Source of the DNA: Pavona decussata
Lineage: Eukaryota
Direction: 5' to 3'
DNA: 64,000 nucleotides
NCBI GenBank assembly: GCA_977016875.1
Contig: CDRNST010000083.1
Location: forward strand, 930,001-994,000
Part shown: positions 14,985 to 50,600 of the stretch, piece after piece
How positions within the stretch are numbered: position 1 is the first letter of the stretch
How the letters are laid out: each line of letters opens with the position of its first letter
Position numbers and translations under genes: made by a program
Notes under the pieces: model-generated
The model's input: the letters and a program-made list of their open reading frames with translations, nothing else
Told to the model about the DNA's origin: nothing
Databases searched by the model: none

Positions 14985-16125
<1,141 letters not shown>

Positions 16126-26639: not shown

Positions 26640-28835
26640 CTATTTCGGGCGAGGAAAGCTGTGTACTTCAGGAAGTTGTCCATATTCATCGTAAGAACTT
26701 CTTCTGTTTCCTCGACTGTAATATCCTCTCCTTGCAGCAGCATCATAGTCATCAGTTAGCTCATCATACCCTCTGTTCTGGTTACCCTGTCTCCCCTGCT
26801 CACTTCTGAAATTACCCTCATTAAGAATTCGTTCACGAGGCCAGTTGTCATCTACAGGTGGTCTAGTTTCTCTCATTCTCATTTTTTTCAGCGTAAAGGC
26901 AAGATCGGCTGCTTTATTCGGCAGAACTGTGCATGACTTGGTTTCCTGTTCAAACCCCCGAGCGGAAACTGTGACTTCATAGGAGCCTGGAACTAGCAAT
27001 CGCCAGAAGTCTCCATCACGCGCTGTGAACACATCATGGCGGCGATTGGCTACAGATATTCTCGCTCCGTCAATTGGTTCGCCATCTTCATCCTTCACAA
27101 AACCGTGAACACCAGTGTGAACCTAGCAGCAAGAAAGTTTGTTACAGTTAGAAAACATAATCTCAAGAACCTACCCTAAACCTAAAGTTTTATTCAGTTT
27201 TTGGTTTTAAAATATTGAAAAAACACAAAAATATATTTACTCCTGTTTACTCCTAGACTTGAAGATACGAATAAAACCATAACATTTAGAGGTATAAAAA
27301 CAAAACAAACTGACCTGGGATGTCTGTTGTAATAATTCTTCAGCCATTCTGAAGCAAAAACTAGCTCTATATATTTGTTTATTTAAAGAACGCACAACTT
27401 ATCACTATCACTGGACGTATTTGTAACAGTCAATATCAATTTGACAGTTGTTATGGGCTTTCCATCTTCACTTATTGTAGACATTGAACTGATAGTGTAA
27501 TTAGAAATAAAATGGTGTCAAAGTTCCTCTGATTGTCGTTGTTTTTTTTTTTCTTCAGCCCAGTTGTTTCCAGTGTAGTCGAACAGCTACCCAGCATCCC
27601 TTTTTAGAATACCAAAAATCAGTTAGTAATACCCATCACATAATTCACTTTACCTGCTCTATATAATTGAGGAGTGCTTCTTTGTTCTCTTGCCAATATT
27701 CCGGTAGTTCACTCGCATTAGGAAACTTCTGGCAGCCAAGCTCCAGCGTTATATCAAAGCAGTTCGAGTGTACGTAGTTATAATCTTGCATCCCTCCTAA
27801 CACGCTAAACCACTTAGCACCATTAGTTATTCCATCAATGAAATGCTCGCGCGGAATGTCTTTACACTTCCAAGGTGCGTTTGCCAGGTGCATTGTGGGA
27901 TGCACTTCTGAATAAGAACGAGCAAGTTGCCTGAACACGTCATCATCCGGGGTAGCACTGTACACGCTCTGTCCCGAGGGATTATCATCATACGGGTAGT
28001 TTGCCACGAGAGCGCCGCTGTGCAGACTAGCTGACAGAACAAAGGGAATTGACTTAATCCACTTAATAACAGCTCGAGTTTCAGGTTGAGGAGGTCCGCT
28101 CGTGCTCGGAAAAAACTGGTCGGGAAAATTTCGATTCAAGTCCACACCGTTCGCGTTTGTACGACTTGATTTCCACTGGTCTTCGATAGAGGTGGCGGCC
28201 ATTTCATATCCATCGGGATTCATGCTCGGCATAATGTGGATTCTTGTCGTGTCCACAATGTTGGTAACTCTTCCGTTCACGCCGTAATTTTTACACAAGT
28301 ACTTGATAAGGTGAAGCAACATCTCTTTTCCTATAGCCTCATCTCCATGCATGTTAGCCACATATTTAAATTCAGGCTCCCCTGGATTATGTTGTCCTGG
28401 GTTGTTAGAAATTTCCATGACCCAGAGTTTCCGGTTTTGTACCGAGCTGCCGATATCATACAAGCGCGCTATTTTACTATACTTCTTTGCATAGTCCTTT
28501 AACAGCCATGTCATTTCTTCATAGTTGTGATGTCTGAAGCTGCTGTTCTTCTCAAGGATCTCGTCTTTGCCGGACTCACTTTCTAACTCCTTGAGCGTGG
28601 ATTTGGCGATTTCTTGGTTGTGTTCCTTAAAGTTTTCCTTGGCGTCTGCTAATTTATGTTTGAGTTCCTTCATTGCTGCAAAAGCATCTGTTTTCTTACT
28701 TTCCTGTTTTCCATCAACCAGTTGGCTCTCGTGTTTTGGAGTTTTTGCTCCCTTTTCAGGCGGTTTTCCCAATGTAGTAAGTGCCAAACTTTGAAAGACC
28801 AGAAACAATGTCAACAGGTTGAGATGAACCGCCAT
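26640..28835 (-). CDS. Secreted M14B metallocarboxypeptidase A (single-domain CPD/CPE-like), about 554 aa
   Basis: Exons 27654-28835 and 26640-27122; signal peptide MAVHLNLLTLFLVFQSLALTTLG; motifs NMHGDE, DLNRNFP, SLHSG, PDDDVFR, GGMQDYNY, ITLELGC; transthyretin-like domain GDFWRLLVPGSY. Confidence 0.93.
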
Positions 28836-29837
28836 GATCACTGCTGTGTTTCCTGAAGACCGGCAAAACATACAATGAGCTCCGAGTTGTTTCTCAGTTG
28901 ACAATCAATTCAGCGTGTAGTTAGTAGCTCTGAGGTCAGTATTGGGAGTGGTTAATAGAGAACCACTCCCTTGAAACATTGGATAATGATGTACATTTTA
29001 CACATCGCATCATGGTCACACATTAGTATATGATCAACGACGACGTATCGGTTTACTCTCGCCAAATTTGATTCTTTACTAAACTATCAAAAGCTTTGTA
29101 GGTAAAATCCGACACAAATTTTCCTTCTCTATCTGATGTTATTTTTTTATTTCTTTTCTTTTTTTCTTACTTATTAATATGTTTTCGTATTAGGACTGTA
29201 AAACACATCTTTCAATATTTGTTTGGTTTTAAAGTCTAAATTATCAGGGCACCTGCTGTGAAGCGACAGGTTAAAGATTCTACCTGCTCACCTTTTAGCA
29301 CACAGATAAGTTATCAGAAAGCCTTGTAAACATATGTTGTTTGATTTAAAAACAAATATTAGCAAAATAATGCAACCCATAGCCTATCATATAATATTAT
29401 CATTAATTTGGATCAATATTACCTTTGGACCAACTAGCGAGTTTAATTTGTCGGCGTTGCTTCGGAACTTATGGACTTAATGGAAACAAAACTACACTAC
29501 CATTCAATATTTTTCCTGTCAATAAGAAAAAAAAATTCCACTAACCTGTCGCTAAGACAAAATCAGCGCTCGCTTTCCCTTTAAATGAGTAAAGACTATA
29601 AATTGCTTGTGTTACAAGAAAGTGTTTATTACAGCCACACCCCACGCGACCAGGGTAAGATCTAAATAAAGATGGTTTATGAACTGCTAAGTTCAGTTAA
29701 TGGAGAAATGATCTAACACAAATGTTTTGGAGTTAAATTTCAAGGCAGAACCCTTTTGACTGCGAGAGAGATTGCATGAGATAGCGAACAAGGTTTTTTA
29801 TTTTCCCTGTTTGTCAGTCAACAAGAAGTTAACCAGC
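28836..29837. promoter_or_regulatory. Putative bidirectional promoter between the divergent carboxypeptidases
   Basis: Start codons 1 kb apart; palindrome GGGAGTGGTT-N7-AACCACTCCC at 28944-28970; CACCC box GCCACACCC at 29634-29642. Confidence 0.55.
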
Positions 29838-32800
29838 ATGTATTATACCTCAGTGGTTGTAGTATTCGCTGTTATTCTAATTGCCAATTTTGTAAACAGT
29901 ACTCCCTTATTGAGAAGAATGCTAGACATGTTTCATGGAGGCGTCGAACAGAAAGAATCACACCAACAAAGTGTCGACATCTTAAATGTGGACGAGTTTA
30001 AACACCACGACTACGAAGAGATGACTTGGTTTTTGAAATACTTTGCAAAGAAGTATCCGGACATTACCAGGCTGTACTCCATCGGGTATAGCGTTCAGAA
30101 CCGAAAGCTATGGGTGATGGAGATTTCAGACAATCCAGGGAAACACGAACCAGGTGAACCTGAAGTGAAATACATTGGTAACATTCATGGCAATGAGGCC
30201 CTGGGTCGAGAATTGTTATTGCAAGTGATCAAGTACCTATGCGATAACTATGCTAGCGATGCTGAAGTTAAGACACTCGTGGATACAACGGGAATTCATA
30301 TTCTACCAAGCATGAATCCAGATGGCTATGAGATGGCAGCTGTTCGAGGCAAAGAAAATAAACTGATTGGGAAGAGAAACGCTCGCCGAGTCGACTTGAA
30401 CAGGAATTTTCCGGATCAATTCTTTCCCAGTACCACTGGTCCACCACAGTTGGAGGTTAAAGCAGTGATGGAATGGATCAAGGAATATCCATTTGTATTA
30501 TCCGCTAGTCTACACAGTGGTGCGTTAGTGGCTCTGTATCCTTACGATGATTCACCCTCAGGACAGAGCTTATACAGTGCTACGCCTGATGATGATGTGT
30601 TCAGGCGACTGGCAAAGACATATTCACAGGTACCCTGTAGTTAGCAAAGAAGCTAGTCTCCATGTAACGCGTAAGACAGGCAAGGCGAAGGGTACCCTAT
30701 AGCGCCTAAGGAACACGTGGGACGTGGGCGTTAAATTCACGTCGCGCGTGACTGGCCTGCTATGGAGAGGACCCGGCCAGTCAAGTCCCCTGCGGTTCAA
30801 TCTGGATGGATGTCATACTGCCCTTAGTCAGGAAAGCTTATGACACATGTTCCGGTGGCTTGTTCCGTCAGTATTGGTAAAATCAACTGTCCCAGAGTAG
30901 TTTTTGGCAAACTTCTCTTTGTGTATTCTCTGTACTATATTTTCTGGTTTATAAGATCCGAGATTTTATTGACTTGTTTAAAACTCGAGCTTATCAACTC
31001 TTAGCAGGGCTGTCTTTGTTCTACAGGCACACCCTGTAATGCACTTGGCCAACCCTAAGTGGAACTGCACCGGTCAAAAAGAAGAGCACTTCATAGACGG
31101 CATCACCAATGGTGCCAGTTGGTCGAGCCTGTCAGGAGGCATGCAGGACTACAACTATGTTCACTCAAACTGCTTTGAAGTAACCTTGGAACTCGGCTGT
31201 GATCGGTTTCCTAAAGATAGCGACTTAAAGAAGTATTGGGTTGATAACAAAAAGCCTTTGATCGAACTGATGCAACAGGTGAGTTCGCGCGCGGTCCATA
31301 AATCAACGGGAAAAACGAAGATCCGTAACTTACAGTACGGACCGGAAAAACGGGGTTAGTAAGATATTTATTATATCTCTGAGGTTTATCACGTGAAAAC
31401 TTATGATAATTTTACATGCGTTTGAGATATTCAATCAGCTGCTGACACGTCACTCGCTTTACTTCGCGCCACTCCTTAGAAGCAATGAATGAATGGCTAC
31501 GCGTTCTCCTTCTCAGGCTGAGTTGCACGAGTTGCGCCTTTGCCAAAAATATTTTCGATATGACTTCAAACGATGCTCTTGCAACTTTCTGTTTATACAT
31601 CTTCATATTGTTGACTAATTCGTTTAGTGATTCTGACCGTAGCTCAGTTAATTACAGTCGAACCTGTATTAAACGGCAAGCCTCCCCCTCACCTCAGCGA
31701 TTTTTCTCGAAAGAACGAAAACAGATAATAATAATCTTTTGTTAGGAAGCTTCCGTTCACTAAACGTGGTTTTCAGAAAGGTCCTATAAAGATTAAATAT
31801 ACAAAAGGCTAAAAAAATACAATATATAAGACAAAATTACAAAATGATAAAAACAGCAATTCAAACTAGAAGCTGAAACTACAAAGATATCATCGATGGG
31901 TTAAGTTAGTTAGTTAGTAAAGGTGTTGTCTGCTCAATCCTTCCATTTAAGAAACTAAGGTACAACTTTCCTCTTGAGGACAAATATTTTCAAAAGGTTT
32001 GACTTAGAACCTTCAAAGGAGTTAAACCTTAAAAAAGGAGGGTGTTGGGGATTTTGAGAATCTCAATTCCATGAACCGCACAGTATGTATGAGCTTTTTG
32101 CGTCCTGTATGAACATAAGTCAATCTAATGTTACCTGTGTCGAATCCAAGGTGCATTATGGCGTCCGTGGATTCGTCAAAAACACCAATGGTGAGCCTCT
32201 CTCTGATGCAACCATTAGCGTCGCTGATCGTCGTCATGACGTCACTTCCGCTAAGGACGGAGATTACTGGCGCCTACTAGTGCCAGGCTCCTATGAAATC
32301 ACGGCCAGAGTAAACGGTTACCAGCCCCAAACGCATCTGGTAGAGTTACACGCGTCAGAAGGAAAGGTGGTTAACTTTACGTTAAAGCGAAACCAGGAGG
32401 ATCAAAAAAAACTATCATTTGAGACAAATGAAGATGACTTGTTGGACAGGGTTATGGTGAGTATTCCCGTTTTGTAAAGAAAGCGAGCTCTCAAAAGCAA
32501 GAAAACTACAACAGACGGGAACTGATAAAGTAGCTCTAATCTATCCCACTGCGGGGGAGAACTGACTTCTGTTTAATTGAAAAGTTCTGCTAACGATCCG
32601 TTAACATTTGCCAAAAATTCCATTGTTTGAATATCACCCGTCTAATTTGAATGCTTTATCTTCACCTGCCACTCCTCCCTTTTGGAAAGCGGGACTTCAG
32701 AACAAAAGAAAAATTAGCTAACGCTACACGTACTGGAGAAAGGGTAGCAAAACCTAAGCAAAATTCCAGACAAATTAGATTACGCTTGCAACCATAAAAA

Positions 32801-33027
32801 AAAAAAAAAAAATAATAATAATGATAATAATAATATGGGGCTTTGGCTTTTCCTTAAAGTACAGTTTAAAAAAGGAGAAAATTTTTATTTCATGTGGTGA
32901 AAGAGTACCCCTCCCTTCCCCCCCCCCCTCCCCCCAATGAAAAGTACTTAGAAAAGTACGTGTTTTGTGATAGGCTGGTGGCTACGTGACAGAAGAGACT
33001 GCTGATCCAAGAGAACGCATTCCATAG
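29838..33027 (+). CDS. Secreted M14B metallocarboxypeptidase B (single-domain CPD/CPE-like)
   Basis: Exons 29838-30629, 31027-31278, 32151-32456 and probably 32974-33027 (TAG); signal peptide MYYTSVVVVFAVILIANFVNS; motifs NIHGNE, DLNRNFP, SLHSG, GGMQDYNY, VTLELGC, GDYWRLLVPGSY. Confidence 0.92.
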
Positions 33028-33600
33028 CCAAATCATGGCGACAGAGAAGAGCAACCAGAAGACAGACACGTGCTACATCCGGGGATGACTGACAGGTAAG
33101 TGAGTAGTCGGCACCGATGCAGTAAGCTCGTAACCGCCATCCTTCGTGCAACACGTTTGACTGTCAAGATTCGCCGTTGCGTCGGTTACTTCCCAAGGGA
33201 CCAGAAATATGAAGAACGTAGCAATTTTGAGAAAGGATAGTGTAATATATGTTATAATAGGAAGTGAGATATAAGTGGGAAGAGTGAATAAGATTTGTCT
33301 GGTTGAAAACGTTGCTTAATGGCGTGGCTAGCAAATAGTCTACTTTTGATAAGCGATGGGGGGGGGGGGGGGGGAGTGAAGGTATTACAAGTAAGCACTA
33401 TTGTTCCCTGGGCAGTTGTTATTCAGTCCTCCACAGTGGAAAGACCCTTGTCCGAACTTTTGGTCACAAAAAAGGCCCGTGCTCTTCCATATTATTTAAT
33501 TTAGTTATTTTAATGATGGATTACCAATGTAGATACGGGTTTGGCTTTGGACGGAGGTTCCATCAAATCATTTCTTTAATATTTACCTCTTTCTATTAAG

Positions 33601-34174
33601 GACCAGGCTGTTTCTTGAAGACCAGTTGCTTGAGGGCGAAACTTCACGGGATGGTGGATCAACTGCGGGAATCAAAACTGGTGAAATGTCTGGTGAAGGA
33701 GAGGGAAGTGGCGCAGAGAACTCTTCGCATGACAAGCGGGAAGTGATGCCCAAGGCTTCCCCTGCCAAAACACCGATAAAACCAAAAGCAAAGGAGAGGA
33801 GTAACAACACTAAAGATTCTCCTTCTTTGAAATCCAAACCACGCAATGCTGTCGAAAAGAAGCCACCTCAAGTTGCCAAGAAGGTGGTTCTGGCTAAACA
33901 AGGTGCGACTGACAAACGATTCTCAAAGCTGATTGGTTCGACCGTAGCTTGCCGTATGGCCGGCAAAAAGATATTGGTAACTGGAAACCTGAGATGGGTG
34001 GGGCACTTGCCGCAACTGCCAGTAGATGATGCTCATCTCATAGCAGGAGTCGAGCTGTTAGCTGATAATAAACTGGGAACTGATGGTACATACCGAGGAG
34101 TGCGCTATTTCAACAGCGCTCCGAAGCGTGGCTACTTCTTCAGACTAAAGGACTGCAAAGCTGTCAAGCATTAA
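33601..34174 (+). CDS. Exon encoding a Lys/Pro-rich linker and a CYLD-type CAP-Gly domain
   Basis: GNLRWVG...IAGVEL...GTDGTYRGVRYF...GYFFRLKDC; acceptor TTCTATTAAG at 33600; phase 2, matching donor GTAAGT at 33096. Confidence 0.85.
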
Positions 34175-35052
34175 TTAATTTAGAAATGACCGCGCCACAA
34201 TATATTTGTTCAACCACATCATAGTTAATTGAGGGACCGGTTATGAAAAGTTCCCACCTTCCCACAATGGAGCTGCAATTTTTGCTGGAAGGGCCGCGAC
34301 CATGCACAATCCTTTGTGTTAACGTTCACACTAGAAGAACGTTTCTAATATCAAGGCCAAAAATGCTAACAAACAAATGTATAACAAAGACGTTTGTCAG
34401 GTTTCTTATTTTTCAGTTAACTCGGTTTTCTCTCTTCTTTTCGAAACTGGTGGCGGCTTTGATTGTAACAGGGGAGAATGAAATTTATTCCCTTCGACTT
34501 AGTCCCCCACAAAGACCCCTTAGAAGATTTAAAGTGTTCAGTGTTGTATCAAGTCTTGCTTTTCTTTTGAACATCAAGTTTTTCCCTCAAAAAACTCACT
34601 GCCGTTCAATCCATTCTTCGAGTTGTGTCTTGGCAAGGTGGAACCACGAGAAGACCATGAACATTATTTTATTTTAACCGCATTTTGCCGAACAAGCGGT
34701 GAAAAATATTATTTATACCAAATGTACCATTGTAAGGTGCATTATTAAAAAGCCTGTTAGAAAGACATTACTGACGTCGTTTGAAAGTAAATCTATTTAC
34801 TACAAACGCCAAAATATCTTTACTTTCCCTAATTACTCGGGCCGTAAGGCGGACCGAGTTAAGGTTTCGGTAGCATTATCAAATTCTTTTTTCTCTTTGG
34901 GGTCGCGATGGACGGAGAGATAAGACTTCGGGCCACGAGTTATTGTTCTCGGTCTCGTTTTTTGTACTCGAGTGGAACGAGTAAAGTTTTCGGTGGCGTT
35001 ATCAAATTCTTCGCGTTCTTTGTACTCGGGCCGTGAGGCGCCGAGTTAAGTA

Positions 35053-35128
35053 ATCGGGGAAGGGGAGGGGAGGGTCCCGAACTCCCTCATTTTTTTCGCT
35101 TCCTAAGCTCCCCCTCCCTTTCCCCGAT
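35053..35128. repeat. Short inverted-repeat (mini-MITE) element
   Basis: ATCGGGGAAGGGGAGGGG / CCCCTCCCTTTCCCCGAT. Confidence 0.55.
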
Positions 35129-38684: not shown

Positions 38685-41600
38685 TTAAACCTTGTGGAAT
38701 GAAGCAGTGGGTGAGGACATTGACCTCACTCTCTCCAAGTCAATGAGCAAGTCAAAGTTTTCAACAGTCGTCTCCACATATCCAACAAATCCTCTGACTG
38801 AACCTCTCAGTGGACCGACGATTTGCGTACCTAGGAGAGAAACAGGAAATTCGTTATATTGCTGTAATACCTCATGCTTTTATACCATAGGCAGCCCTTC
38901 GATACACAAGCAAACGAGCGAGAATACGCGTGTTTCCATCCTCGAGATTCAGCTTTAGCTGCCATATTGAATTTAAAAGGGCGCATTCTTTTGGTACAAT
39001 TCTGGCTATTCTTATTCCGGAATACCAGTTCCCCCCTTCCCCCCCCCCATCTATTCTTAGAAAACTGTATTCCATTCATTCTGCCTCCGTTTACTATTCT
39101 GTTTATTGCGAATCACTCAGAATAGGCCCCAAAGAACATGAATACCCTCTATTCCGTGTATTCCTATTCCTGAGTAGTCCCAAAAAGAACGCACCCTAAG
39201 TACTTAGCACTTATTGAGTGTAACCTGTTTTTTTCAGCGAACGCCTAGCCTCCCTGCATCGACTAAATAAATGTGTCAAGGCACTCTTTACACTCCTAAA
39301 TCGAGGCAAGTAAAGATTAAACTTGGTGGAATCGTAAAGGAACCCTGTCAGATTTTACCTTGGTACTCAAATGGGACAATAACCTGATAACCAAGACACC
39401 ATACTACATTAGTGTGATTACACTCACTGAGGTTAGCTATTGGGACATTAAGACATTGTTGTCTATAACATGTTCACACTTACCGAGATTATCCATTGGG
39501 ACACCCAAATATTGTTTCCTTGTTGGACTTGCAGCCTCTGAACTTAGTGACTCACATGAAGTCTGGTCACTGCTTATGCTTAAATCGGCGCTGAATCGTG
39601 TATCATCTCCCATGGAATGGCTGGCTGATTTAGTTCTCCTAAGTGATGAGCACTTTGTTGGTCTTGTCACCTCAGGTGTATGTGAAGCCGTCCTTTTGAG
39701 AGTCTCTTTCATAGGAATACTATGACACGGCCTACTGTCACGTGGTCCTCCAACAGGCAGGATGCGCGGTAACCGTAACATTTTAGGCGTCGACTGCGCA
39801 GAATTCACCGTTCCTTGTGAGCCACGCACACTGGGATTCTGGGATTGGGTGATAGCTATTCCGTATGACCTCAAACTCGGAGATCTGGAGCCTGACCTAT
39901 AAGACATGCCGGTGGAGAGTTCGTCCATAGATTCACGCATTTCTATTGTCTGGCTTCCACTCAAATCATTAAGCTGATAATCACTTGGCTCAACTGTTAC
40001 TCTTGGATAAGCTCTTTCATCATCGTAAAGTAGGTTGCTATGGTGAGTACAATCCAGAACCACATCAGGAGCTTTCTGCACATCTCGTAACGGCATTTGA
40101 AACACCTGTATAACACACAGAGAGACAACATGGAATTACGAACACAAGGTTCACAGAAACTATGTTAACAGAACGTCATAGTTATACCGTTTTGAAATAT
40201 CGTAATGAGAGATGGCGTTAGAAGGTTCGGCGACACGGCACTTAGAGAATGTACTGCCGCACATTGGCCAGTGATTGCACTAAAAAAAGAGGCTGTAACT
40301 CTACTACACAGGAGTTCCACAACATAGTCTATTCCAGGCGTTCAAACAATGGGGAGTGGCGCGAAGTGAATTGCTATGTATGCGAATAATAAAGACGAGG
40401 AGCGATAAAAACGAGAAGGGACTGGGCAGATGGGGTGCGTTCTCTCGCCTTCTCTCTCCAGTCTCCTCACATTATTATTCACCCGCATCACATTTTCTTT
40501 GCGCGGCTCCCACTATCTAAACGCAAAGCACAGGCTATCCACAACAGGACACGGTAATCTGCAGGTATTGATAATATAACGGTACGGTACGATACAGTAT
40601 TTACAACCGAAGGGACAGACGAACAGAGTGAAAGGGGGGGGGGGGGGGGGCGCTTGTAAGGTTTTTGTGCAACATGCCACATCGTACTCGGTATTCTAGC
40701 GACGCTTTCCATTCACCAAAAATTTTCGGTTTGAATTTTCGGAAATTTCGGTCTCGAATGGAAAGGGCTTATTCTCGGTCGGTTTCCACTTTTCGGGAAC
40801 ACTGAAAAGGTTGTCCTAAATTTTCGAAAATCTTTTCGGGAAAAGATCCTGTTCCATTCGATTCCCATCCGAAATTTTCGAAAATTTCGTCGAATGGAAA
40901 GCGCCCTAGGTGTCTTTTATCACGAGCAATTCGTCTGAAAGAAGTTGGGTAACGACAACAACAGAATTTGTCACTGACCTGGGAAATTCCTGTGTTACTT
41001 CTCGCGCGCATGGCATCCAACTGTACTCTGCTGGCGGACGACAGTCGCCGGCGGTCATAGGAGTCCGTATACAGGGACTTGGACTTTTGGAGACTACTTA
41101 GATTACACGTCAGAAGAGCCCACCAACACTCCCGCACCTTCTTTTGAATGACGCAATAGAAAATGAAGATTGCAAATCCCTGAAGACTGTTGCAGACAGC
41201 AAACATGTAATGAAACACGAGACGTGCATCCGCTACTGCAAAGAAACCGAACATCCACGTGATGCCGACCAAGATAAGGATTCCAAAGGCTCGCTTGATT
41301 TTTAGGAGCCCTTCGTTACCACCGTTTGGGTCAGCGGCATTAGGCGGACGGGTGGCGAGTTTGTACATGATTAACGAAAATGTAATCGTGTTGATAAGGA
41401 TGACAAACACCACTGGAGCAACAAAGGCAGCAAAAAATGCTATGTTTCCAATGCGACAGCTGAAAAAAACAAGTTCAATCAGTGAGTAAATTGATATTGA
41501 TGCAATATCTAAGTAGACAGCCGCGGCAGCAAGATAACTTCTGTTAGTTCTCGCCTTTTTGACCATAGAAACTAAGCAAGAAACACAGATGATTGGCAAA

Positions 41601-44600
41601 AAATTACTTTCCCAGCCTGGAAATTATTTTTTTTGTCTCTAAAAACGTAAATTTAACTATCGTAACGTTACTTTTAAATACAGCAGCTTTTCCTTGCTGT
41701 TAAGTCCCAAGTTTTACAAAACAAATGTAGATACATAATTCAGTAACAGAAATTTAATTTGTACTTACATAAGTAAGTAGGTTCTGTCTATTTAAAAGCA
41801 TTGGTGTGCATACTGGAGGATGTTTGTGCACCTACTGGGATGCGTGGGTCACTATTGAGCTGTCTATTAAGATGTCTGAGCGAGTGTTAAGATATCTGAG
41901 CCACTATCATTGTTAAGTGTACTGCCCCTTTCAGACGTGTGACAGGGTTTTATTGTTTTCAGTAATAATCTTGGTTTGCTTTCAGTTTAGTCGAACAAGT
42001 TTTCATACTCACTAGTGTTTTCCTCCATAGCTGGTTTTATCCACAGCAATTGTGACGACTACAANNNNNNNNNNNNNNNNNNNNNNNNNNNNNNNNNNNN
42101 NNNNNNNNNNNNNNNNNNNNNNNNNNNNNNNNNNNNNNNNNNNNNNNNNNNNNNNNNNNNNNNNNNNNNNNNNNNNNNNNNNNNNNNNNNNNNNNAATGA
42201 TGTCACGTGACTTTTGGTCCATGGCTTCATCTCATTGTAAGAAGAAGCTCAACAGCAACAGATAGTGACTTACCCCATCCCAGTGCGGAACACTTCCACA
42301 TGACGTAATCTCCATAGTCTCTAAACACTTTGACAAAAGCCTGGTACATGAAGTACGCTTCAATCAGCATCCATAGAAATGCTACCAACAGGAAGTAATG
42401 CACGAGAGCTGCTACAATCTGACACGCGTCCTCAGATACACGGCCTCTCTCCACCCCCGACACGAACACAATTAGTACACACAGAAGCGAGGCGCACAGA
42501 TGAAGGAGAATCTTGGCGGCGATCTGATCCTTTCGCAGCTTCCTGTGAGAATACAACAGACAACAGTTACCTCTCATTCCTCTAACAAGTTTCAGGAATG
42601 AAGCACAAATGCATGAAATTAAAAACAACAACGAAAACACAATTAGGAAATATCGAAAGAAAGAAAATATGCCACTGTAGTAATAAAGCTCAACAGTTTT
42701 CATTTCCGTGGTCACATTTGACTCAAGCTCTAACCAAATTACATGATTCCATGTGTGACCGTGTTTTCAGGGAGGAAAATTAAAAAGCTCGCTTAAAATT
42801 TAATGCCATCGGCTTAAAGAAACTGAGTAAATAGCTTGAAAAACCTTTCAACCGAATTTCTTTGATTTAATAATAACAAAAAAAAAGTTGGTGCAAAACA
42901 ATAACTGGATTTTTATCATGGTTGATGACGCACAAAATTATCTTGAAATAAAACATTCACATTAAAAAGCATGCAACTGCTGCGAAACAATATTATCGCT
43001 TGCTCTTCGTGTCAATATTTGCTCTTCGAATCAATATATAGTAAGTGAGCATTCCCAACAGTAGCTAAGACCTTCTGTTGTGTAGCCACCAAACTGCTTT
43101 AGCTATGAAAATACACGCTTACTTGAAAAAGCCGAAAGTGAAGATAGTCAGCGACAGTCCCAGAATAGACAATGCGCATCCAATATAGCTGATGAGTGAC
43201 AGCACAGTGGAATGTTTACCGCACGCCTTGGATGACGGGCCATCAATATCCTGAGATTCACAATAACACAAGCATGTTAACTTCAAATAAGCCGTACATC
43301 GTTAGTGCCGAATCAATAGCAAACAAATGCACCGGACACTCAGAATGGCGGTTCTTTCGGTTTACACTTCAAACTATTCTTGGTACGACAGAACTGATTA
43401 AACCCATCCCCTACGGAGTGCAGAAAGTTTAAGCCGCGAGAGGGGTGGTGGTGGGGGGTGGGAGATTCAAACTTATGTGAACAACGGGATTTACTGCTTT
43501 TTGCTGATTATATGGTGAGGAGCAGGCCAGTGGAACTTGGATGGCGTAGTGGTACTATTACGAACATTACTACATGTACACGACGTTACTTGTTTGAGGA
43601 CGTCAAATGTTACTATGAATAGCAAGATGTATCTAAAACGAAAACACCGGATTGACGCTCAGTAAAATTACTCACCACCAAGGCTGCAAAGTTGGTCATG
43701 TGATTGCATTCGCAAATAATAGTGTCGTTAACAATGCCACGGAGGGAACACCCAGCAGTCGACCAACCACCTATAGACAAAAACATTGACACAACATTCG
43801 TACAACGTTATCAAAACCTAAGGCTCGAGTTCGTTTACAATAGCACTCCTTTATCCCGGTTCTGGCTTCTGAAGCAACAATGTAAAAACAAACACAAATT
43901 CACAAACATAGCAACTAAAGGAGAATGCTCGGGGGCAAACGTCTGAAGGTGTGACTCACTCATCTTATCTGAACCCTAACTTATCGACTCCCTGAACACT
44001 GGCGGCGCGAAATACGCACAAGCAGAAGACCTCAACAGTACAGTGCTTGCGTGAACTTATTCCACAACTTAATGTGGGAAGCAGACTACACAACGTCCAC
44101 TAACTTCCACTTTGAGAAAAAGTTGCATTTCCGTTTACATGAAAACAATTTTGGGTAAACATTTTTTACAGCAAACTTTTGTTACATTAACAGGTGACTT
44201 ACGTTTTTCGAAATCCCACCAAACACACCTGGTGCTGTTTTTTACCACCTATTTTGAAAAAAATAAAAAAAATTAATAAATAAAAAAGGAAGTCAGTGAC
44301 GATAAGTAAACAAAAAAGGTGATAGAGTGATTTTCAAGTGAGTGTCAAAAGTCATTTCGCGTTTGCTTTGGTTTTGCTTTACTAGACTCTCTGTGATTGG
44401 TTGGCAAAGTTCGCGCCATTTTCTCAACCAATGGAAATCCAAACCAAAATCAATCGTGCTTGGACGCACGCGTTTTTCCCGCGTTTGACGCAGGTTACAT
44501 ATATTTGCTTCGAGTTCTGATTGGCTGATTGTGCTGTTTACGTCTGTTATGAATGGCTAGAGAAATTACTTTGGTTTTGGTTTTACAACACTCAATTAAA

Positions 44601-47600
44601 AACCGCTCTTACACACTGTAACATCTTCGCCCTGCCGAAACGTTTTAAGTCGGCTAGCGTGATAACACAAAATGCAAATCTAATCATTTAACTCGAAGAT
44701 GGTACCAAGTTACTCTTTCATACTCCTACTAGTAACAAAAAACACGAGTTTAGTGAAACAAAGTAGTGCAATTGCTGTTGTAATGTTTCAGTCTGTGGAT
44801 AAATTCGTTTAGTGCCACCATCCAAATGAAATCTGTCGAGCATTACCAATACGCGATACTTAGTCAGGTCTTGCCGAAAGGGAAAATATTTGGCTCGAAG
44901 TCATGGTAGCTCCTAACTTGGTCAATAAATTATTTTTCAAGTTCAACAAACTATGAACTTCCATGGTAAAATTCATTTCAACGCTGTTTACTATCAATGT
45001 GCAGTTTCAGGTCAGTTTAACTTCACAAAATTGCTTCCAATCAGTTTCCGCGCGGTACGTACCTGTTCGTGAGGCATTTTGAACTTAATAATAACAGGCG
45101 TGGTCAAGTTGGCCACGTGCTTTCTTCTCAAACTGGCAGAAAGGACAGGGCTACTCTCAGTGACTTTACTTCCTGTAGAGTTCTCCATGGTGTAACTCGA
45201 AGTTTCTGATCTTTCTACTCTGGCCACTTTTTCCGTCGTAAAACTGTCCTCACAAACTTCCTTTGGCCGGTATTCAGGCGCAAACAGTTTGCTGGTCCGA
45301 TAGTAAACCACAATCAAGGTTGTATTCTCTGTGTCGTTGGCGTTTAAAATTGACCCGGGTACGGTTATACTTGCTTCACTCTCTTCATTTGTAGAATTCA
45401 TGGTCACGTTAATAGCGATTGTGTCTTGGGTTGTTTGAATAGACACGTCAACATTACTATTGGCTTTGTTGATTAGCTGTGTATGAACTGCAATCTCGGA
45501 TGTGTCTTTACTGAATTTTCCGCCCTTGTCAATGTAATCCTCAAGAATTTGAACAAATCTGAAAGGCAAAAAATCATTAAAATAGAAACAAAATCGAGCC
45601 TCCACTTACAATTACAGTCAACGCTCGCCTTGCGGACACCCCGATAATACGAAAAGCAGCTAAATCCCCGGCAAAAAATAAATTACAGAAGTTTGTCGCT
45701 ATTATGGACACTAACTCGCGGTCCTGAAGGTGTCCGCAATAAAGGGAGTTGACTGTATGTACCTAACAGAGAGGAAAAGCCAGCAAGACGAGCCTCCAAG
45801 AAAGAAAAACATATGGATCAAATACTGTACAATGGTGAAGAACAGTTTTAATTTCAGTTCTCCTAAGCTTCTCGGTGATACCAAACAGAACCTCATTATT
45901 TCCAACATTTCTCGTTCGATTTTGTCATTAACTAAAGTAAACGGGAAACGGAATCCATGACCTCCCTACAATATGATGAAAACATACACCGCAATATACG
46001 ACGAATGTAGGGCTCTGATGCGTAAGATCTCCGGGTCTACTGTGAAAAACACAATAATCATGGTTTACTTTAAGGCCGACAGGTTGTCTTATCTAAAGCA
46101 GTTCTGTCTTATTTCGTAGTTTCTGAAGTCAATCTGTATTACGAATGGCGTAGAAATCATTTATCAGTACTTACTTCGCAGATCTGTTGTTCTTTTTCTG
46201 TGCATCGTCTAACACTTCGGGCTTAGCTTTCATCACGTGAGTTAAGGTGTATAACATCTGATCTCCCACGTCGGCGGAAGTGACGTTTGTTTTGACCACA
46301 TTGTCCAGGATGTTTGCCGTGATTGTCAGGTCCTTTTGCAACAATTTTGATGGCTTGGAAGTGATATTTCGGACTTCCTTCATAACTTTGAGCGCGTTAG
46401 CATGCGTCACTGGAACCTGAAAAGAATGCTGACTTAATTTCTGCCTTTACAGGAGTCCACAGTGGTGAGTAAAGCCAGTATGACGTATTTTTAGTTTAAA
46501 CGCCTGGCGAACACGGTCGTTAGGGCGTTATCACAATGTTCCGGTATTTATTTGAACTTCACCTTATGAAGCTGATTGCTTCAGCGTAAACCTTAACTTG
46601 TTATACAACGTTGGTTTTCGTTAAATTACTTCCGTCTTTGAATTGTAACGTTCGTCGTACTTTTCCCTAGAGGTCATTAAAGAATTTCTTTTGAAGACAT
46701 TTCAGACTGTTCATTATGGTTCATTTAATATTAACACTAAAAGGCATGTACAGGAGTATCGTGGTCACGTTAACAATTCTGGTTTGGTTCAACTGTGCGA
46801 ATAAATCAGTGGAATAAAAGTATAAATGATATTAAATCAAGTTTAAAAAATGCCCACGTTTAACAATCGCCGGGTCCAGGGGCTGAGATTTAAACAAAAA
46901 CCATCAGTTATTTAAAAACAAAAAGCCAAAATGCCCTCTCCCATTTAGCCTCCCACGCAGTCTTTTAACGGGAGGAGGTTATACGAGTCCCCCAAAACGA
47001 CTGTGTGGGAGCCTATTCCCCATCCCCTTCCTCAAAACCCGCTCCTTTTTAAAGAAGCCCTAAAACAGACATAAAATAACTTAGCAATCAGGGGTCAGTA
47101 ACGGACAATGAAGCACGAAGTTCCTACCCCACGGTTGGGTACTACGAGCGCCTCCTTACCTTGTTAAGTTTGTCCAGAGCCTGCGTTATTTGTGACTCTT
47201 GGCTGATTTCTGATATTAAACAAAAATTGAACAATACATGACTCATCTGGCTAAGTAACTGCAAGGACGCCGCCATTAGTCGACAGTCCTATGCCGATCG
47301 AGAAACGCAGAAGTCGCACATCGCGGTGATTTTTCAGCAATGAAAACTGGATTTCGAAATCCAGAATATAACTATAGGGACGTCTTATACAGAAGATTAC
47401 ACTGGTAGAATCTGTTTGGAAATTGAACTACTTAACTGGAATTCACTGGGTTTCCTATAAGGAGTAGTGAGAATTTGTCGCAAGGCTTACATCAATTCAA
47501 ATCTTTTTAAATAAGCCCAAGAAATTTACAAATAGCCATAAGAAACACCCGGAAACACTTTTTTCCAGTTACTAGAATTTGAAGAATTTGTTGCATTTCC

Positions 47601-50600
47601 ATCCAAATTTTGATATTTTGCCAGGCAAATACGCCGGTGCGCAAAATGCGTAGCTACAGCACGCCAGGTGCACTGCTCTCAAGGTGCGGATGGGCTTCCT
47701 GTGCTTTCGCTTTCTACTCCTGGGCCGGTTGTTCGAAAGCCGATTAAATTTAATCCACGATTAAAAGTTAACCGAGGTTTTCTGCTCACTCGTTAAAATT
47801 GTTTCTAAACTCTAATGTTAAGCTAGTGGCAAAGAAAAGTCAACGTCAAAACTAAGGGACAAAAATCTTTTTGAAAAATCTTTATTGATGTGTTATTAAA
47901 CTCGAACCAAAGTTCTTGTTAATCCAGGATTAGCTTAATCGGGCTTTGAACAACTGGGCCCTGGTTTCTCAAACTGCTTTGAAAATTCTCCTGCAATGGT
48001 TTATAGCTGCCATTACCTGTTGAGTAACTGTGGTTGCTGCTGTAGGGCCCAGGCCCCACCTTTGTGTAGGCCCGTACTCCTATATAAAATCGTTGATTAG
48101 CTTTCAGACCGCTAACGTCCTTTGACAGAGTCTTCTCCCCGCTCAGGTAGGTCCGCGTTATGCCACCCTGTTCATAGACCACAATCTCGTACTGAGTAAT
48201 TTTTCCATTGCAGTCTTTAGCACTGGGAATGGACCATGAAACTCTGATGGTGTTTTTTCCGCGCGGTATTACCAAGACATCACGGGGCGCTCCACTTGGA
48301 GCTACAAACAAACAAACAAGGAATGGCATGGCATTAACAACAAACTGAAAGTCCAAAAATACATTATGGGACTTGTTTTTGGAGGTAAAGAGTTAATTGT
48401 GTAAATTCCACCTGACACTTCTCTTCATTCGTAAGTTTAGCTCGTCCACAATATAACCAACATGTAAGTAACACATGTTTGCACAATGGACAAAAGGCAG
48501 CCATCTTACCTGCTTGTTTTGTTTTAAAATGTTTGTTCACACTGTATGGGCCAACATCTCCATCTTTATAATAAGAAGCGACCTCCACCGTGTAGGACGT
48601 GTAAGGATGTACGCCATATAACGTTATCCTCGCGTCGCCACCCGGACTTGTCTTGTTCCGCTTGTTTATGAGCCAGGGTGAGTGTCCTGTGTCTGTTTTG
48701 TAACGCACCATGTACTGAAGAGTGTCTGCAGGCGTCGGATCTGTTACATGAAGTAGTACTTGCCTGGACTGCACATCAGTTACAATAATAACAGGGCGAG
48801 GAGCTGGGAACGAATGATTCAAGAAAGTAAATACGTAGTTCTGAAAATCCATCGTAAGCAATTAAGGACCTCTCTCTAAAGAAACGTTATAAGGCCAACA
48901 CCTCTAGAATGATCCTTAAACAACACAACTGAACCTTTTTGCCTTTCACTTCGAACCCTCTCTAAAGTATAAAGCATGGTAGGACAATCTGCTTCTTAAT
49001 CGGGGAATGTTTAGTTGTAATGTCGAGTGACGCTTCACGAAAATGTGTGAGTGTCCTTGACGCTCTGCTTACCGTGTACAAGCAGCAGAATATTCCGTGT
49101 GGAATTGATGGCTAGTGTCGGGTACCAAGCCGAACAGGATATAATGGAACCTCTGTCCTTGTATTTGACTTGATTCAATGTTAGCACGCTTTTCACGCTT
49201 CCATTTCCATATCTAATGCGCTGGACGTGTGACAGGAGCGGTGTGGGAATACGCCTTCTGTTTTTGTACCATTCTATGTGGACTCCAGCTTGACCATTTA
49301 CAAAGCATGTCAAGTTTACAGAGCTCGTACGGTTTAGCTCAACTTTTCCACTTGGAGGACTCACTCGTGGTACACTCCCTACAAAGTTAAATGTTAAAGT
49401 ATAAATTCTACAAAACTTAGCAAATAACGAAAGTCTACAAACGGTGAAGAAATGTCATCAGCTCATCTGTTTGATCACGTGGTACGGCACCCTCTTGGAT
49501 TTCACCGATACCAATTCAATCAATCTGATCAATGTAAACATCGATACCATAAACAGGAGATACCAGAGGTTATCCCTATCGAGGGTATCCCCTTTTAAAT
49601 CAAAGCAATTCAAATATATCGTTCGAGACCATAGCCATTCGGAGAAGTTTCCGGCACTGATTAATATTCTACAAGCAGTTGGTTGTAGTTCACTCGAGAG
49701 AATACAAATACAGTCGAACCTCCGCTAACGGACACCTCCCGTAGGCGGACACCTCTCGTAAGCGGACACTTGGTCATGTTCTCAGCTGCATACAAACACT
49801 ACATATTTATCCTCCTATAAGCGGACACCTCTCTTAAGCGGACACTTTTTTCTGGCCCCAAGGATGTCCGTTTACGGGAGGCTCGACTGTACAGTCTATT
49901 AAACACATTCCAGTAGTCTCAATAGATCACCCGTGTTCCACTCTAAAGCATAATAGCTTGGTTTGCTTTAAGATATCCTTACCTTCAGTAGGCAAGCATT
50001 CATAAATCTCAACTCGCATACAAATGTAACCACCCGTGTACGAGACTGGATTGAAGCGAATAAAACGTGCAAATATTCTGCGAGGAAACATCTTCCTGAT
50101 TACGGTGTCATTGTCCCAGTTTCCTTGAAATATCTGAAGACGGAACAAATGTCCATGTTTAGAGAGTCACGTGTATTGATTATTTTGTTTTTACTTCATT
50201 AATAACAAATTTAATTTCTTTTGTCATTCATTACTTTTAGTTTGATAAATTTTAACCAAAAAATATGCACTGAGTTCACATAAATGTGTCCACAGTAATC
50301 CGTGGTATTGCTTCATCTATAGTCGTAATATCAACCAACAAAGGGCCGAAGTCTAACTTGGAAAATGGTGTAAGACAAGTACTGATAAGAAAGCAGATGA
50401 ATGTAAGTAGATAAGTAAGCAGTAAGTAGAAAAATGTGTGAGTAGTCACTGCTACATTCCTTTTGGACACTGTTTACAGTAAACTTGAAAAAGCCTGAAA
50501 CATTTTAACTACAGGGGTTAGCCAGATTCACATTGGTTTAGAGCACGTTTTTGTTAAACTCCCGTCCGTCTGAACTGCCGGCCCAATGAGTTTACGTGAT

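What the first reader, a model, noticed from the sequence alone, without database searches (positions are those of the whole stretch)
32151..34174. Secretory carboxypeptidase spliced in frame, through one TAG, to a CYLD-type CAP-Gly domain
Seen: carboxypeptidase B exon 3 ends in phase 0 (GTGAGT at 32457). A well-bounded exon at 32974-33095 reads AGGYVTEETADPRERIP*PNHGDREEQPEDRHVLHPGMTD with a single TAG (33025-33027, followed by C); the other two frames each hit a TGA within 32 nt. Its GTAAGT donor is phase 2, exactly what the CAP-Gly exon 33601-34174 needs. Apart from that one codon the locus encodes signal peptide, M14B peptidase, transthyretin-like domain, linker and CAP-Gly with no transmembrane segment between. 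Known: M14B enzymes are luminal or secreted, CAP-Gly domains are cytosolic, and UAG-C is a relatively leaky stop context. I know of no such fusion. Inference, three options: (a) programmed readthrough giving short and CAP-Gly-extended enzymes; (b) a real fusion gene with a nonsense allele or base-call error here; (c) a second cistron or separate gene starting at gggATG 33085 (MTDRTRLFLEDQ..., about 194 aa cytosolic CAP-Gly protein).
Basis: partly seen in the sequence, partly recalled or inferred. Interest (0 to 1): 0.85.

Follow-up and report, generated by a model that had tools for sequence, protein, structure and literature searches.

The report
Secreted carboxypeptidase fused to CAP-Gly
This coral gene really does join a secretory carboxypeptidase to a CAP-Gly domain, normally a cytosolic module, in one mRNA; the fusion is found in five groups across Cnidaria, and the in-frame TAG is a variant or error of this reference sequence, not a readthrough signal.

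Summary
RNA contigs from three independent studies of the same coral each hold one spliced transcript. It joins 29838-30629, 31027-31278, 32151-32456, 32974-33095 and 33601-34315 at GT..AG borders. All three read A, not T, at 33025, so the codon is AAG (Lys), not TAG.

Full-length orthologues with the same order (signal peptide, M14 peptidase, transthyretin-like domain, linker, CAP-Gly) occur in:
- stony corals (Orbicella, Oculina),
- an octocoral (Dendronephthya),
- hydrozoans (Hydra, Hydractinia),
- a record that is probably a scyphozoan.

At the TAG position they carry K, E, Q or F. The Met at 33085 is Leu in two of them.

Programmed readthrough and a separate CAP-Gly cistron are not. Whether the reference T is a true allele could not be checked.

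The interesting residue is the architecture itself. The enzyme resembles carboxypeptidase D domain II. It has a cleavable-looking signal peptide and no membrane span. It ends in a CAP-Gly closest to the third CAP-Gly of CYLD, without the GKNDG motif and with two invariant cysteines. That predicts a CAP-Gly inside the secretory pathway. I found no paper describing this.

The parts
29838..30629 (+). Coding exon 1. Start ATG at 29838, signal-peptide-like N-terminus (29838-29900, 21 aa), then the first 200 or so residues of the M14 catalytic domain with the HxxE zinc motif, DLNRNF and the second zinc His.
   Evidence: Pfam PF00246 7e-60. Duck carboxypeptidase D domain II 1H8L 2e-82. RNA contigs cover it and run past 29800. 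The motifs are seen.
31027..31278 (+). Coding exon 2. End of the M14 domain, with the Tyr248-equivalent (DYNY) and the catalytic Glu (LELGC).
   Evidence: Pfam PF00246 6e-12. Joint 30629>31027 in X1 and X2. Motif.
32151..32456 (+). Coding exon 3. Transthyretin-like (CarboxypepD_reg) domain and a short acidic tail. It ends in phase 0.
   Evidence: Pfam PF13620 3e-18. Joints 31278>32151 and 32456>32974 in X1, X2 and X4.
32974..33095 (+). Coding exon 4, 122 nt of linker. It is conserved as coding sequence in hexacoral orthologues.
   Evidence: Both borders are confirmed as GT..AG joints in three runs. The two halves align collinearly to residues 478-493 and 496-517 of P0208.
33025..33027 (+). TAG in the window. 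RNA contigs of three studies read AAG (Lys). Orthologues have K, K, K, E, Q or F here.
   Evidence: table 3: at 33025 T>A in 100% of contig depth in X1, X2 and X4. Orthologue sequences.
33601..34174 (+). Coding part of exon 5. It holds an acidic Ser-Gly cluster (about 33689-33712), a Lys-rich linker, a CAP-Gly domain (Pfam match 33980-34153, modelled domain 33899-34171) and the stop TAA at 34172-34174.
   Evidence: Pfam PF01302 8e-11. AlphaFold2 pLDDT 89.7. Foldseek best hits are CYLD CAP-Gly3, TM 0.71-0.77. The Ser-Gly motif is conserved in 11 of 12 orthologues.
34175..34315 (+). 3' untranslated region, as far as the spliced contigs of X1 and X2 reach.
   Evidence: table 8: records 1 and 13 end at 34315.
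26640..28835 (-). Head-to-head paralogue. It is a carboxypeptidase D-like gene in two exons (M14 at 27645-28835, transthyretin-like domain plus tail at 26640-27098) without a CAP-Gly. It is context, not part of the fusion gene.
   Evidence: Pfam PF00246 1e-82 and PF13620 3e-16. The same divergent pair lies next to a CAP-Gly exon in another cnidarian contig, L005.

Best explanation
Positions 29838-34174 are one five-exon gene. Its protein has, in order:
- a signal peptide,
- an M14B (carboxypeptidase D domain II-like) zinc carboxypeptidase,
- a transthyretin-like domain,
- a disordered linker of about 140 residues,
- a C-terminal CAP-Gly domain closest to CYLD CAP-Gly3.

The TAG at 33025 belongs to this reference sequence only. 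It is either a nonsense allele of the assembled haplotype or a base error. The species' mRNAs read AAG and relatives have sense codons.

How it works (inferred). The signal peptide takes the whole chain, CAP-Gly included, into the secretory pathway. There the catalytic domain trims C-terminal Arg or Lys, as carboxypeptidase D, M, N and E do. The CAP-Gly sits on a long flexible tether that may carry a glycosaminoglycan. It serves as a protein-binding module that holds the soluble enzyme at a luminal or extracellular partner, or brings substrates to it. In this it would play the part that the membrane span, GPI anchor, amphipathic helix or extra domains play in other M14B enzymes.

Shown here: the gene structure, the sense codon in RNA, conservation in five cnidarian groups, and the domain identities. 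Inferred: the luminal location, the enzyme's specificity, and the role of the CAP-Gly.
For: One spliced contig of 2266-2333 nt joins all five exons at GT..AG in X1 and X2. X4 shows the joints 31278>32151, 32456>32974 and 33095>33601. No contig lies in intron 3 or intron 4. Position 33025 reads A in all three runs.

There is no second copy or retrocopy in the 602-Mb assembly.

Full-length proteins with PF00246 + PF13620 + PF01302 come from:
- Orbicella, Oculina and Dendronephthya, plus transcript-sized contigs;
- Hydractinia, Hydra and two EukProt records.

The window's exons align to these proteins in order, at 75-89% identity to the closest one.

All ten N-terminally complete orthologues examined start with a short hydrophobic segment and have no later hydrophobic stretch. 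Two N-glycosylation sequons are kept in 11 of 12. Six Cys are invariant. An acidic Ser-Gly-x-Gly motif in the linker is kept in 11 of 12. The two Cys inside the CAP-Gly are invariant in 23 of 23 family members.

The zinc ligands, Asn-Arg, Tyr and the catalytic Glu are present in the window's gene. The nearest solved enzyme is duck carboxypeptidase D domain II. The CAP-Gly fold and its closeness to CYLD CAP-Gly3 are shown.
Against: - The runs laid are Logan contigs labelled 'RNA?' rather than raw reads. They show that the spliced form exists, not how abundant it is, and they can hide a minor T allele or a minor unspliced form.
- The reference DNA at 33025 could not be checked.
- The secretory location rests on sequence features only. 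No signal-peptide predictor was available, and every characterised CAP-Gly I know of is cytosolic.
- The residue at the Arg127-equivalent position is Lys in the hexacoral fusion proteins, the window's included, although an Arg follows it. The octocoral orthologue has Gln at the catalytic Glu. Full activity is therefore not certain in every lineage.
- No ligand of the CAP-Gly is known.
Confidence: 0.82

Rival explanations
1. Programmed stop-codon readthrough. The TAG is the normal codon. Most ribosomes stop and give a short enzyme, and a fraction read through to add the CAP-Gly.
For: Coding conservation continues downstream.
Against: The mRNA contigs of three studies read AAG, not TAG. Orthologues have K, E, Q or F at this position and no stop. 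The downstream conservation is therefore explained by ordinary translation.
Confidence: 0.02
2. Two genes or two cistrons. The enzyme ends before the CAP-Gly part, and a cytosolic CAP-Gly protein of about 194 aa starts at ATG 33085.
For: An ATG at 33085 is in frame. In the reference sequence as written, the TAG would end the enzyme at 33027.
Against: Contigs join exon 3 to exon 4 and exon 4 to exon 5, and none starts inside exon 4. The Met is Leu in Orbicella and Oculina. Exon 4 upstream of the ATG is conserved as protein. Every full-length orthologue is a single open frame.
Confidence: 0.03
3. The gene structure is the same but the topology differs. The N-terminal hydrophobic segment does not lead to translocation of the chain, for example because it acts as a reverse signal anchor. 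Enzyme and CAP-Gly then face the cytosol, where the CAP-Gly could meet ubiquitin or cytoskeletal partners as in CYLD.
For: All characterised CAP-Gly domains are cytosolic (general knowledge). CYLD CAP-Gly3, the closest relative, binds ubiquitin and NEMO (PMC8511506). Basic residues follow the hydrophobic segment (RR in the window, KK or KRK in relatives).
Against: The hydrophobic core is only about 11-15 residues and is followed by small residues, which is typical of a cleaved signal peptide. All characterised M14B enzymes are secretory (general knowledge). Conserved sequons, an even number of invariant Cys and an acidic Ser-Gly motif fit a luminal protein. The canonical tubulin/EB1-tail binding motif GKNDG is absent.
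Confidence: 0.1

Closest known systems
Carboxypeptidase D domain II and the other M14B (N/E subfamily) enzymes (CPD, CPM, CPN, CPE, CPZ)
   Same: A signal peptide, then an M14 catalytic domain, then a transthyretin-like domain. About 60% identity to duck CPD domain II over exon 1 by my count on the printed alignment (1H8L, 2e-82). Zinc ligands, Asn-Arg, Tyr and catalytic Glu are present, as is the Asp in the YPYDD stretch that gives basic specificity in this subfamily (the mapping comes from general knowledge of the family).
   Different: One catalytic unit rather than the three of bilaterian CPD. No membrane span, cytosolic tail or GPI signal. Instead a long linker and a CAP-Gly domain, which no described M14B enzyme has. 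Lys sits at the Arg127-equivalent position in hexacorals.
Third CAP-Gly domain of the deubiquitinase CYLD (PDB 1IXD, 7OWC, 7OWD)
   Same: Best sequence and structure match (5e-12 with the family profile; TM 0.71-0.77, rmsd 1.2-2.0 A, 35% identity). Both have TDG where canonical domains have the last three residues of GKNDG. Both lack the Trp before GVEL. Both have a Cys near the C-terminal end of the domain.
   Different: CYLD is cytosolic, and its CAP-Gly3 binds ubiquitin and NEMO (PMC8511506). Here the domain is the C-terminus of a protein with a signal peptide, and it has a second invariant Cys in the first strand. Whether the ubiquitin-contact residues are kept was not tested.
Canonical CAP-Gly domains of CLIP-170, p150Glued and TBCB, which read EEY/F C-termini
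   Same: The same fold (Foldseek probability 1.0, TM 0.6-0.7). As an idea, a module that reads protein C-termini joined to an enzyme that cuts C-termini would make sense.
   Different: The GKNDG motif is LGTDG and the groove Trp is Ile or Val. Binding of EEY/F tails is therefore not expected.
Genes with programmed stop-codon readthrough extensions
   Same: In the reference sequence a single in-frame stop separates a complete enzyme from a conserved C-terminal extension.
   Different: The stop is absent from the mRNAs seen and from all orthologues.

Membership tests
M14B (N/E subfamily) metallocarboxypeptidase | Peptidase_M14 domain above the Pfam threshold, followed by a transthyretin-like domain | tested here: met
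   PF00246 at 203.5 and 46.3 bits (cut-off 21.6). PF13620 at 66.2 bits (cut-off 32.3). Best solved relatives are CPD-II, CPN and CPM.
M14B (N/E subfamily) metallocarboxypeptidase | Zinc ligands HxxE and His; Asn144, Arg145, Tyr248 and Glu270 equivalents | tested here: met
   HGNE, DLNRNF, SLHSG, DYNY and LELGC are all present in the window's exons 1 and 2. The octocoral orthologue P0082 has Gln at the Glu.
M14B (N/E subfamily) metallocarboxypeptidase | Arg127-equivalent, which stabilises the transition state | tested here: inconclusive
   The aligned position is Lys in the hexacoral fusion proteins, with Arg at the next position (not in P0050). It is His in the octocoral. It is Arg in medusozoans and in the window's paralogue.
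M14B (N/E subfamily) metallocarboxypeptidase | Removal of C-terminal Arg or Lys in an enzyme assay | not testable with these tools
   Needs recombinant protein and a substrate such as dansyl-Phe-Ala-Arg.
CAP-Gly domain | Match to PF01302 above threshold, and the CAP-Gly fold | tested here: met
   42.1 bits against 26.5. AlphaFold2 pLDDT 89.7. The top 41 Foldseek hits in the PDB are all CAP-Gly domains.
Canonical EEY/F-binding CAP-Gly | GKNDG motif and the groove Trp | tested here: not met
   LGTDG (or LGTNG, LATDG) replaces GKNDG. Ile or Val replaces the Trp before GVEL in all 23 family members.
CYLD CAP-Gly3 subtype | Closest to CYLD CAP-Gly3 rather than to other CAP-Gly domains | tested here: met
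   5e-12 against 3e-6 for the next family. Ranks 1-3 in Foldseek.
CYLD CAP-Gly3 subtype | Ubiquitin or NEMO binding through the residues mapped in PMC8511506 | not tested
   The residue numbering of the solved chains could not be mapped reliably from the printed alignments.
Programmed stop-codon readthrough gene | The stop codon is present in the mRNA | tested here: not met
   AAG in the contigs of X1, X2 and X4.
Programmed stop-codon readthrough gene | The stop codon is conserved in orthologues | tested here: not met
   K, K, K, E, Q and F at that position in P0055, P0065, P0050, P0208, P0059 and P0080.
Secretory protein | N-terminal cleavable signal peptide and no membrane span | tested here: inconclusive
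   Hydropathy and the shape of the N-terminus fit in the window and in ten orthologues. No dedicated predictor or experiment was available.

The most novel reading that the evidence does not exclude
This would be the first CAP-Gly domain that works inside the secretory pathway or outside the cell. A fusion found in both Anthozoa and Medusozoa placed a CYLD-like CAP-Gly, perhaps stapled by a disulfide between its two invariant cysteines, at the end of a soluble carboxypeptidase D. There it would serve as a tether or a substrate-recruiting module. The reference individual may in addition carry a natural allele that cuts the CAP-Gly off.
Probability: 0.5. Interest if true: 0.65.

Novelty: new variant of a known kind. 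Interest (0 to 1): 0.45.

Why it matters
CAP-Gly domains are textbook cytosolic modules of microtubule plus-end proteins, tubulin chaperones and CYLD. Here one is kept at the C-terminus of a signal-peptide-bearing carboxypeptidase in both Anthozoa and Medusozoa. It has lost the tubulin-tail binding motif and gained an invariant cysteine pair. This suggests the fold was re-used in a new compartment.

It also adds one more solution to an old theme in the M14B family. Each member carries its own device for being held in the right place.

Hydra, Hydractinia and probably other laboratory cnidarians have the gene, so the idea can be tested directly. For genome annotation, the case is a reminder that a single in-frame stop in a reference assembly should be checked against RNA and relatives before readthrough is proposed.

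Tried and rejected
- **Second copy in the assembly.** I looked for an alternative haplotig or retrocopy in the window's own assembly, to see the other allele at 33025. Exon 4 and exon 5 are each single copy.
- **Both alleles in JGI metagenome contigs.** I scanned with a 26-base pattern carrying W at the variable site. There was no match.
- **Coral skeletal matrix lead.** The 'CAP-Gly orthogroup' of skeletal organic matrix proteins in Stylophora turned out to be a microtubule-associated tumor suppressor 1 homologue, which is unrelated.
- **Nematocyst lead.** 'Carboxypeptidase D' entries occur in jellyfish nematocyst and venom proteomes. They cannot be tied to the CAP-Gly fusion rather than to one of the paralogues, so this stays a lead only.
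- **Literature.** Searches for CAP-Gly together with carboxypeptidase D or metallocarboxypeptidase gave only tubulin-code papers. A search for carboxypeptidase D in coral secretomes gave nothing useful.
- **Short CAP-Gly hits.** The representative-protein search with the CAP-Gly exon gave mostly proteins of 180-260 aa. Those I inspected are terminal-exon fragments of the same cnidarian family, not stand-alone proteins. Two of them lie downstream of M14 and transthyretin-like exons on genomic contigs.
- **Other look-ups.** Cluster members carried no names. The ESM Atlas look-up gave only generic CAP-Gly clusters. Earlier findings of this scan held nothing on this place.
- The five exons were never joined into one protein for any search or fold. 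All searches used single exons by reference, or stored orthologues. No complex prediction was run, because I do not claim a specific binding pair.
Full report
**1. The observation**

The window is eukaryotic DNA with GT..AG introns. The public runs that hold it are labelled as one coral species or as coral metagenome.

- Exon 3 (32151-32456) ends in phase 0 before GTGAGT.
- 32974-33095 lies between an AG and a GTAAGT. Frame 1 is open except for TAG at 33025-33027, which is followed by C. Both other frames carry stops.
- The exon's 122 nt leave two bases, which 33601 completes to AGG.

Pfam confirms the domains: Peptidase_M14 in exons 1 and 2, the transthyretin-like CarboxypepD_reg domain in exon 3, and CAP_GLY at the end of exon 5.

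I also fixed the two upstream exons. They are 29838-30629 (ATG to GT) and 31027-31278, both phase 0.

**2. Is it one transcript, and is the stop in it?**

Reads were laid on four runs from four studies, on 29800-34700.

In X1 and X2, one contig of 2266 or 2333 nt lies on 29800-30625, 31023-31276, 32149-32455, 32973-33093 and 33599-34315. These are the tool's coordinates. Each joint fits equally well a few bases to the right, which gives the GT..AG borders used here. In X4, separate contigs carry three joints: 31278>32151, 32456>32974 (121 letters on the shorter side) and 33095>33601.

No contig lies in intron 3 or intron 4. There is thus no sign of an enzyme mRNA that runs on to the TAA at 32477, or of a transcript that begins in exon 4.

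The runs are only guessed to be RNA. However, contigs that skip four introns exactly at GT..AG are spliced. The 602-Mb assembly holds no second copy of exon 4 or exon 5 that could be a retrocopy.

At 33025 all three runs read A in the whole contig depth. The codon in the mRNA is therefore AAG, Lys.

The same contigs differ from the window at a few other sites. Two of these, 31186 and 32409, are shared by all three runs. The main contig of X1 differs at 8 letters in 2266. The reference haplotype therefore simply differs a little from the animals sampled for RNA.

T to A is not a known kind of RNA editing. The simplest reading is a private nonsense allele or a base error in the reference. A scan of JGI metagenome contigs for either allele found nothing. 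Contigs also drop minor variants, so a T allele at low level in those animals is not excluded.

**3. Relatives**

The exons had to be searched apart. To reach proteins of the fusion's length, I used the 396-residue single-exon M14 domain of the head-to-head paralogue (27645-28835, minus strand) as the query.

Among its hits are proteins of 618-690 residues that carry PF00246, PF13620 and PF01302 together. They come from Orbicella faveolata, Oculina patagonica, the octocoral Dendronephthya gigantea, and several transcript-sized Logan and JGI contigs. A search with the CAP-Gly end of one of them found nine such proteins.

A fragment from the representative search (P0164) led to a second branch of the family. 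It holds Hydractinia symbiolongicarpus (792 aa), Hydra vulgaris (750 aa) and two EukProt records. One of these is tagged GoldUCD, which I take from memory to be the Aurelia genome project.

The architecture is therefore shared by Anthozoa and Medusozoa. I did not see it in any non-cnidarian hit. The bilaterian M14B proteins have other additions. This is not a rigorous exclusion.

The window's exons align in order to the closest orthologue, P0208:

| Window exon | P0208 residues |
|---|---|
| exon 1 | 28-291 |
| exon 2 | 293-375 |
| exon 3 | 376-477 |
| exon 4, before the TAG | 478-493 |
| exon 4, after the TAG | 496-517 |
| exon 5 | 520-709 |

Identity to P0208 is 75-89% per exon.

At the TAG position the orthologues have Lys (three), Glu, Gln or Phe. 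The Met at 33085 is Leu in Orbicella and Oculina.

Two genomic contigs of other cnidarians show M14, transthyretin-like and CAP-Gly open frames in the same order and strand (L004; L005). L005 also has the divergent paralogue next door, as here.

**4. What the protein looks like**

*N-terminus and hydropathy.* All ten N-terminally complete orthologues examined, and the window's exon 1, begin with a short hydrophobic core of about 11-15 residues, followed by small residues. After residue 45 no 19-residue window exceeds a mean hydropathy of 1.10.

*Features that fit a luminal protein.* Across twelve orthologues, two N-glycosylation sequons are kept in eleven and six cysteines are invariant. An acidic Ser-Gly-x-Gly cluster in the linker is kept in eleven. 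From general knowledge, that motif is the consensus for glycosaminoglycan attachment.

*The catalytic domain.* It is closest to duck carboxypeptidase D domain II (2e-82). It has the zinc ligands, the Asn-Arg pair, the Tyr and the catalytic Glu. It also has the Asp of YPYDD, which in this subfamily is taken to confer preference for basic C-terminal residues (the mapping is from general knowledge).

Two oddities stand out:
- The position aligned with Arg127 is Lys in the hexacoral fusion proteins, with an Arg next to it.
- The octocoral protein has Gln at the catalytic Glu.

*The CAP-Gly.* A 23-sequence alignment of the domain gave an AlphaFold2 model with pLDDT 89.7. Its best PDB matches are the CYLD CAP-Gly3 structures (TM 0.71-0.77, rmsd 1.2-2.0 A, 35% identity), followed by other CAP-Gly domains. 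Sequence searches agree.

The canonical GKNDG motif is LGTDG here, and the Trp before GVEL is Ile or Val. As in CYLD CAP-Gly3, binding of EEY/F tails of tubulin or EB1 is therefore not expected.

Two cysteines are invariant in all 23 sequences. One is in the first strand and one in the last short strand of the model. Whether they can bond could not be measured, because the tools give no coordinates.

**5. How it most likely works**

*Shown.* It is one gene and one mRNA with a sense codon. The architecture is conserved. The catalytic residues are largely intact. The CAP-Gly is closest to CYLD CAP-Gly3.

*Inferred.* The signal peptide carries the whole chain into the secretory pathway. The enzyme trims C-terminal Arg or Lys there or outside the cell. 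The CAP-Gly, on a flexible and possibly glycanated tether, binds a partner that localises the soluble enzyme or delivers substrates.

This fits the family's habit of using a different C- or N-terminal device in each member:
- a membrane span and tail in CPD,
- a GPI anchor in CPM,
- an amphipathic helix in CPE,
- a partner subunit in CPN,
- a frizzled-type domain in CPZ.

That list is from general knowledge.

*The main rival at this level* is that the chain stays cytosolic, where CAP-Gly domains normally live and where CYLD CAP-Gly3 binds ubiquitin and NEMO (PMC8511506). I give it about one chance in ten.

**6. Known or new**

The proteins are in public sets under the automatic name 'carboxypeptidase D-like'. 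The gene is therefore not undiscovered as a sequence.

I found no paper that mentions a CAP-Gly on an M14 carboxypeptidase. I know of no described CAP-Gly in a secretory protein.

I file it as a new variant of a known kind. What remains is a moderately surprising and testable domain re-use.

**7. Limits**

- The joined five-exon protein was never built or searched.
- The runs laid are contigs, not raw reads.
- The reference DNA at 33025 is unverified.
- Location, activity and ligand are all predictions.

Noticed in passing
window 26640-28835 (minus strand): A paralogous carboxypeptidase D-like gene lies head to head with the fusion gene, about 1 kb between the two start codons. It has its own signal peptide, an M14 domain in one exon and a transthyretin-like exon with a long tail, but no CAP-Gly. 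The same divergent pair is seen in another cnidarian contig (L005).
   Followed up: partly
window 31296-31390 and 34216-34390: Short stretches in intron 2 and just after the 3' UTR collect very high summed contig depth in all four runs, up to about 18,000 in the coral metatranscriptome. Many loose ends sit there. They look like copies of abundant expressed repeats.
   Followed up: no
P0082 (Dendronephthya) and the hexacoral orthologues; window 30369-30371: The octocoral orthologue has Gln in place of the catalytic Glu. The hexacoral fusion proteins, the window's included, have Lys at the Arg127-equivalent position. Medusozoan orthologues and the window's paralogue keep Arg.
   Followed up: partly
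L008:131-715 and L008:1783-2382: A 2.9-kb Logan contig of the medusozoan type carries two CAP-Gly terminal-exon-like open frames in tandem on one strand. This suggests a local duplication of this exon or gene in that species.
   Followed up: no
window 15241-16125 (+): An open frame of 294 aa with three C2H2 zinc fingers at its end.
   Followed up: no
window 40769-48861 (minus strand): Exon-sized open frames with secretin-family 7TM halves (40769-41599, 42227-42715) and fibronectin type III domains (47919-48861). Probably one adhesion-type GPCR gene.
   Followed up: no
window 34830-35060: By eye, a degenerate direct repeat of about 50 bases (the 'ctcgggccgt.aggcg..ccgagttaag' motif and a 'ttcggt.gc.ttatcaaattctt' motif, each seen twice) lies downstream of the gene. 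Not checked with the repeat tool.
   Followed up: no
medusozoan orthologues P0211-P0215, residues about 20-35: Directly after the signal peptide these proteins have a His- and Arg/Lys-rich stretch with dibasic sites. The anthozoan proteins lack it. It may be a pro-segment.
   Followed up: no
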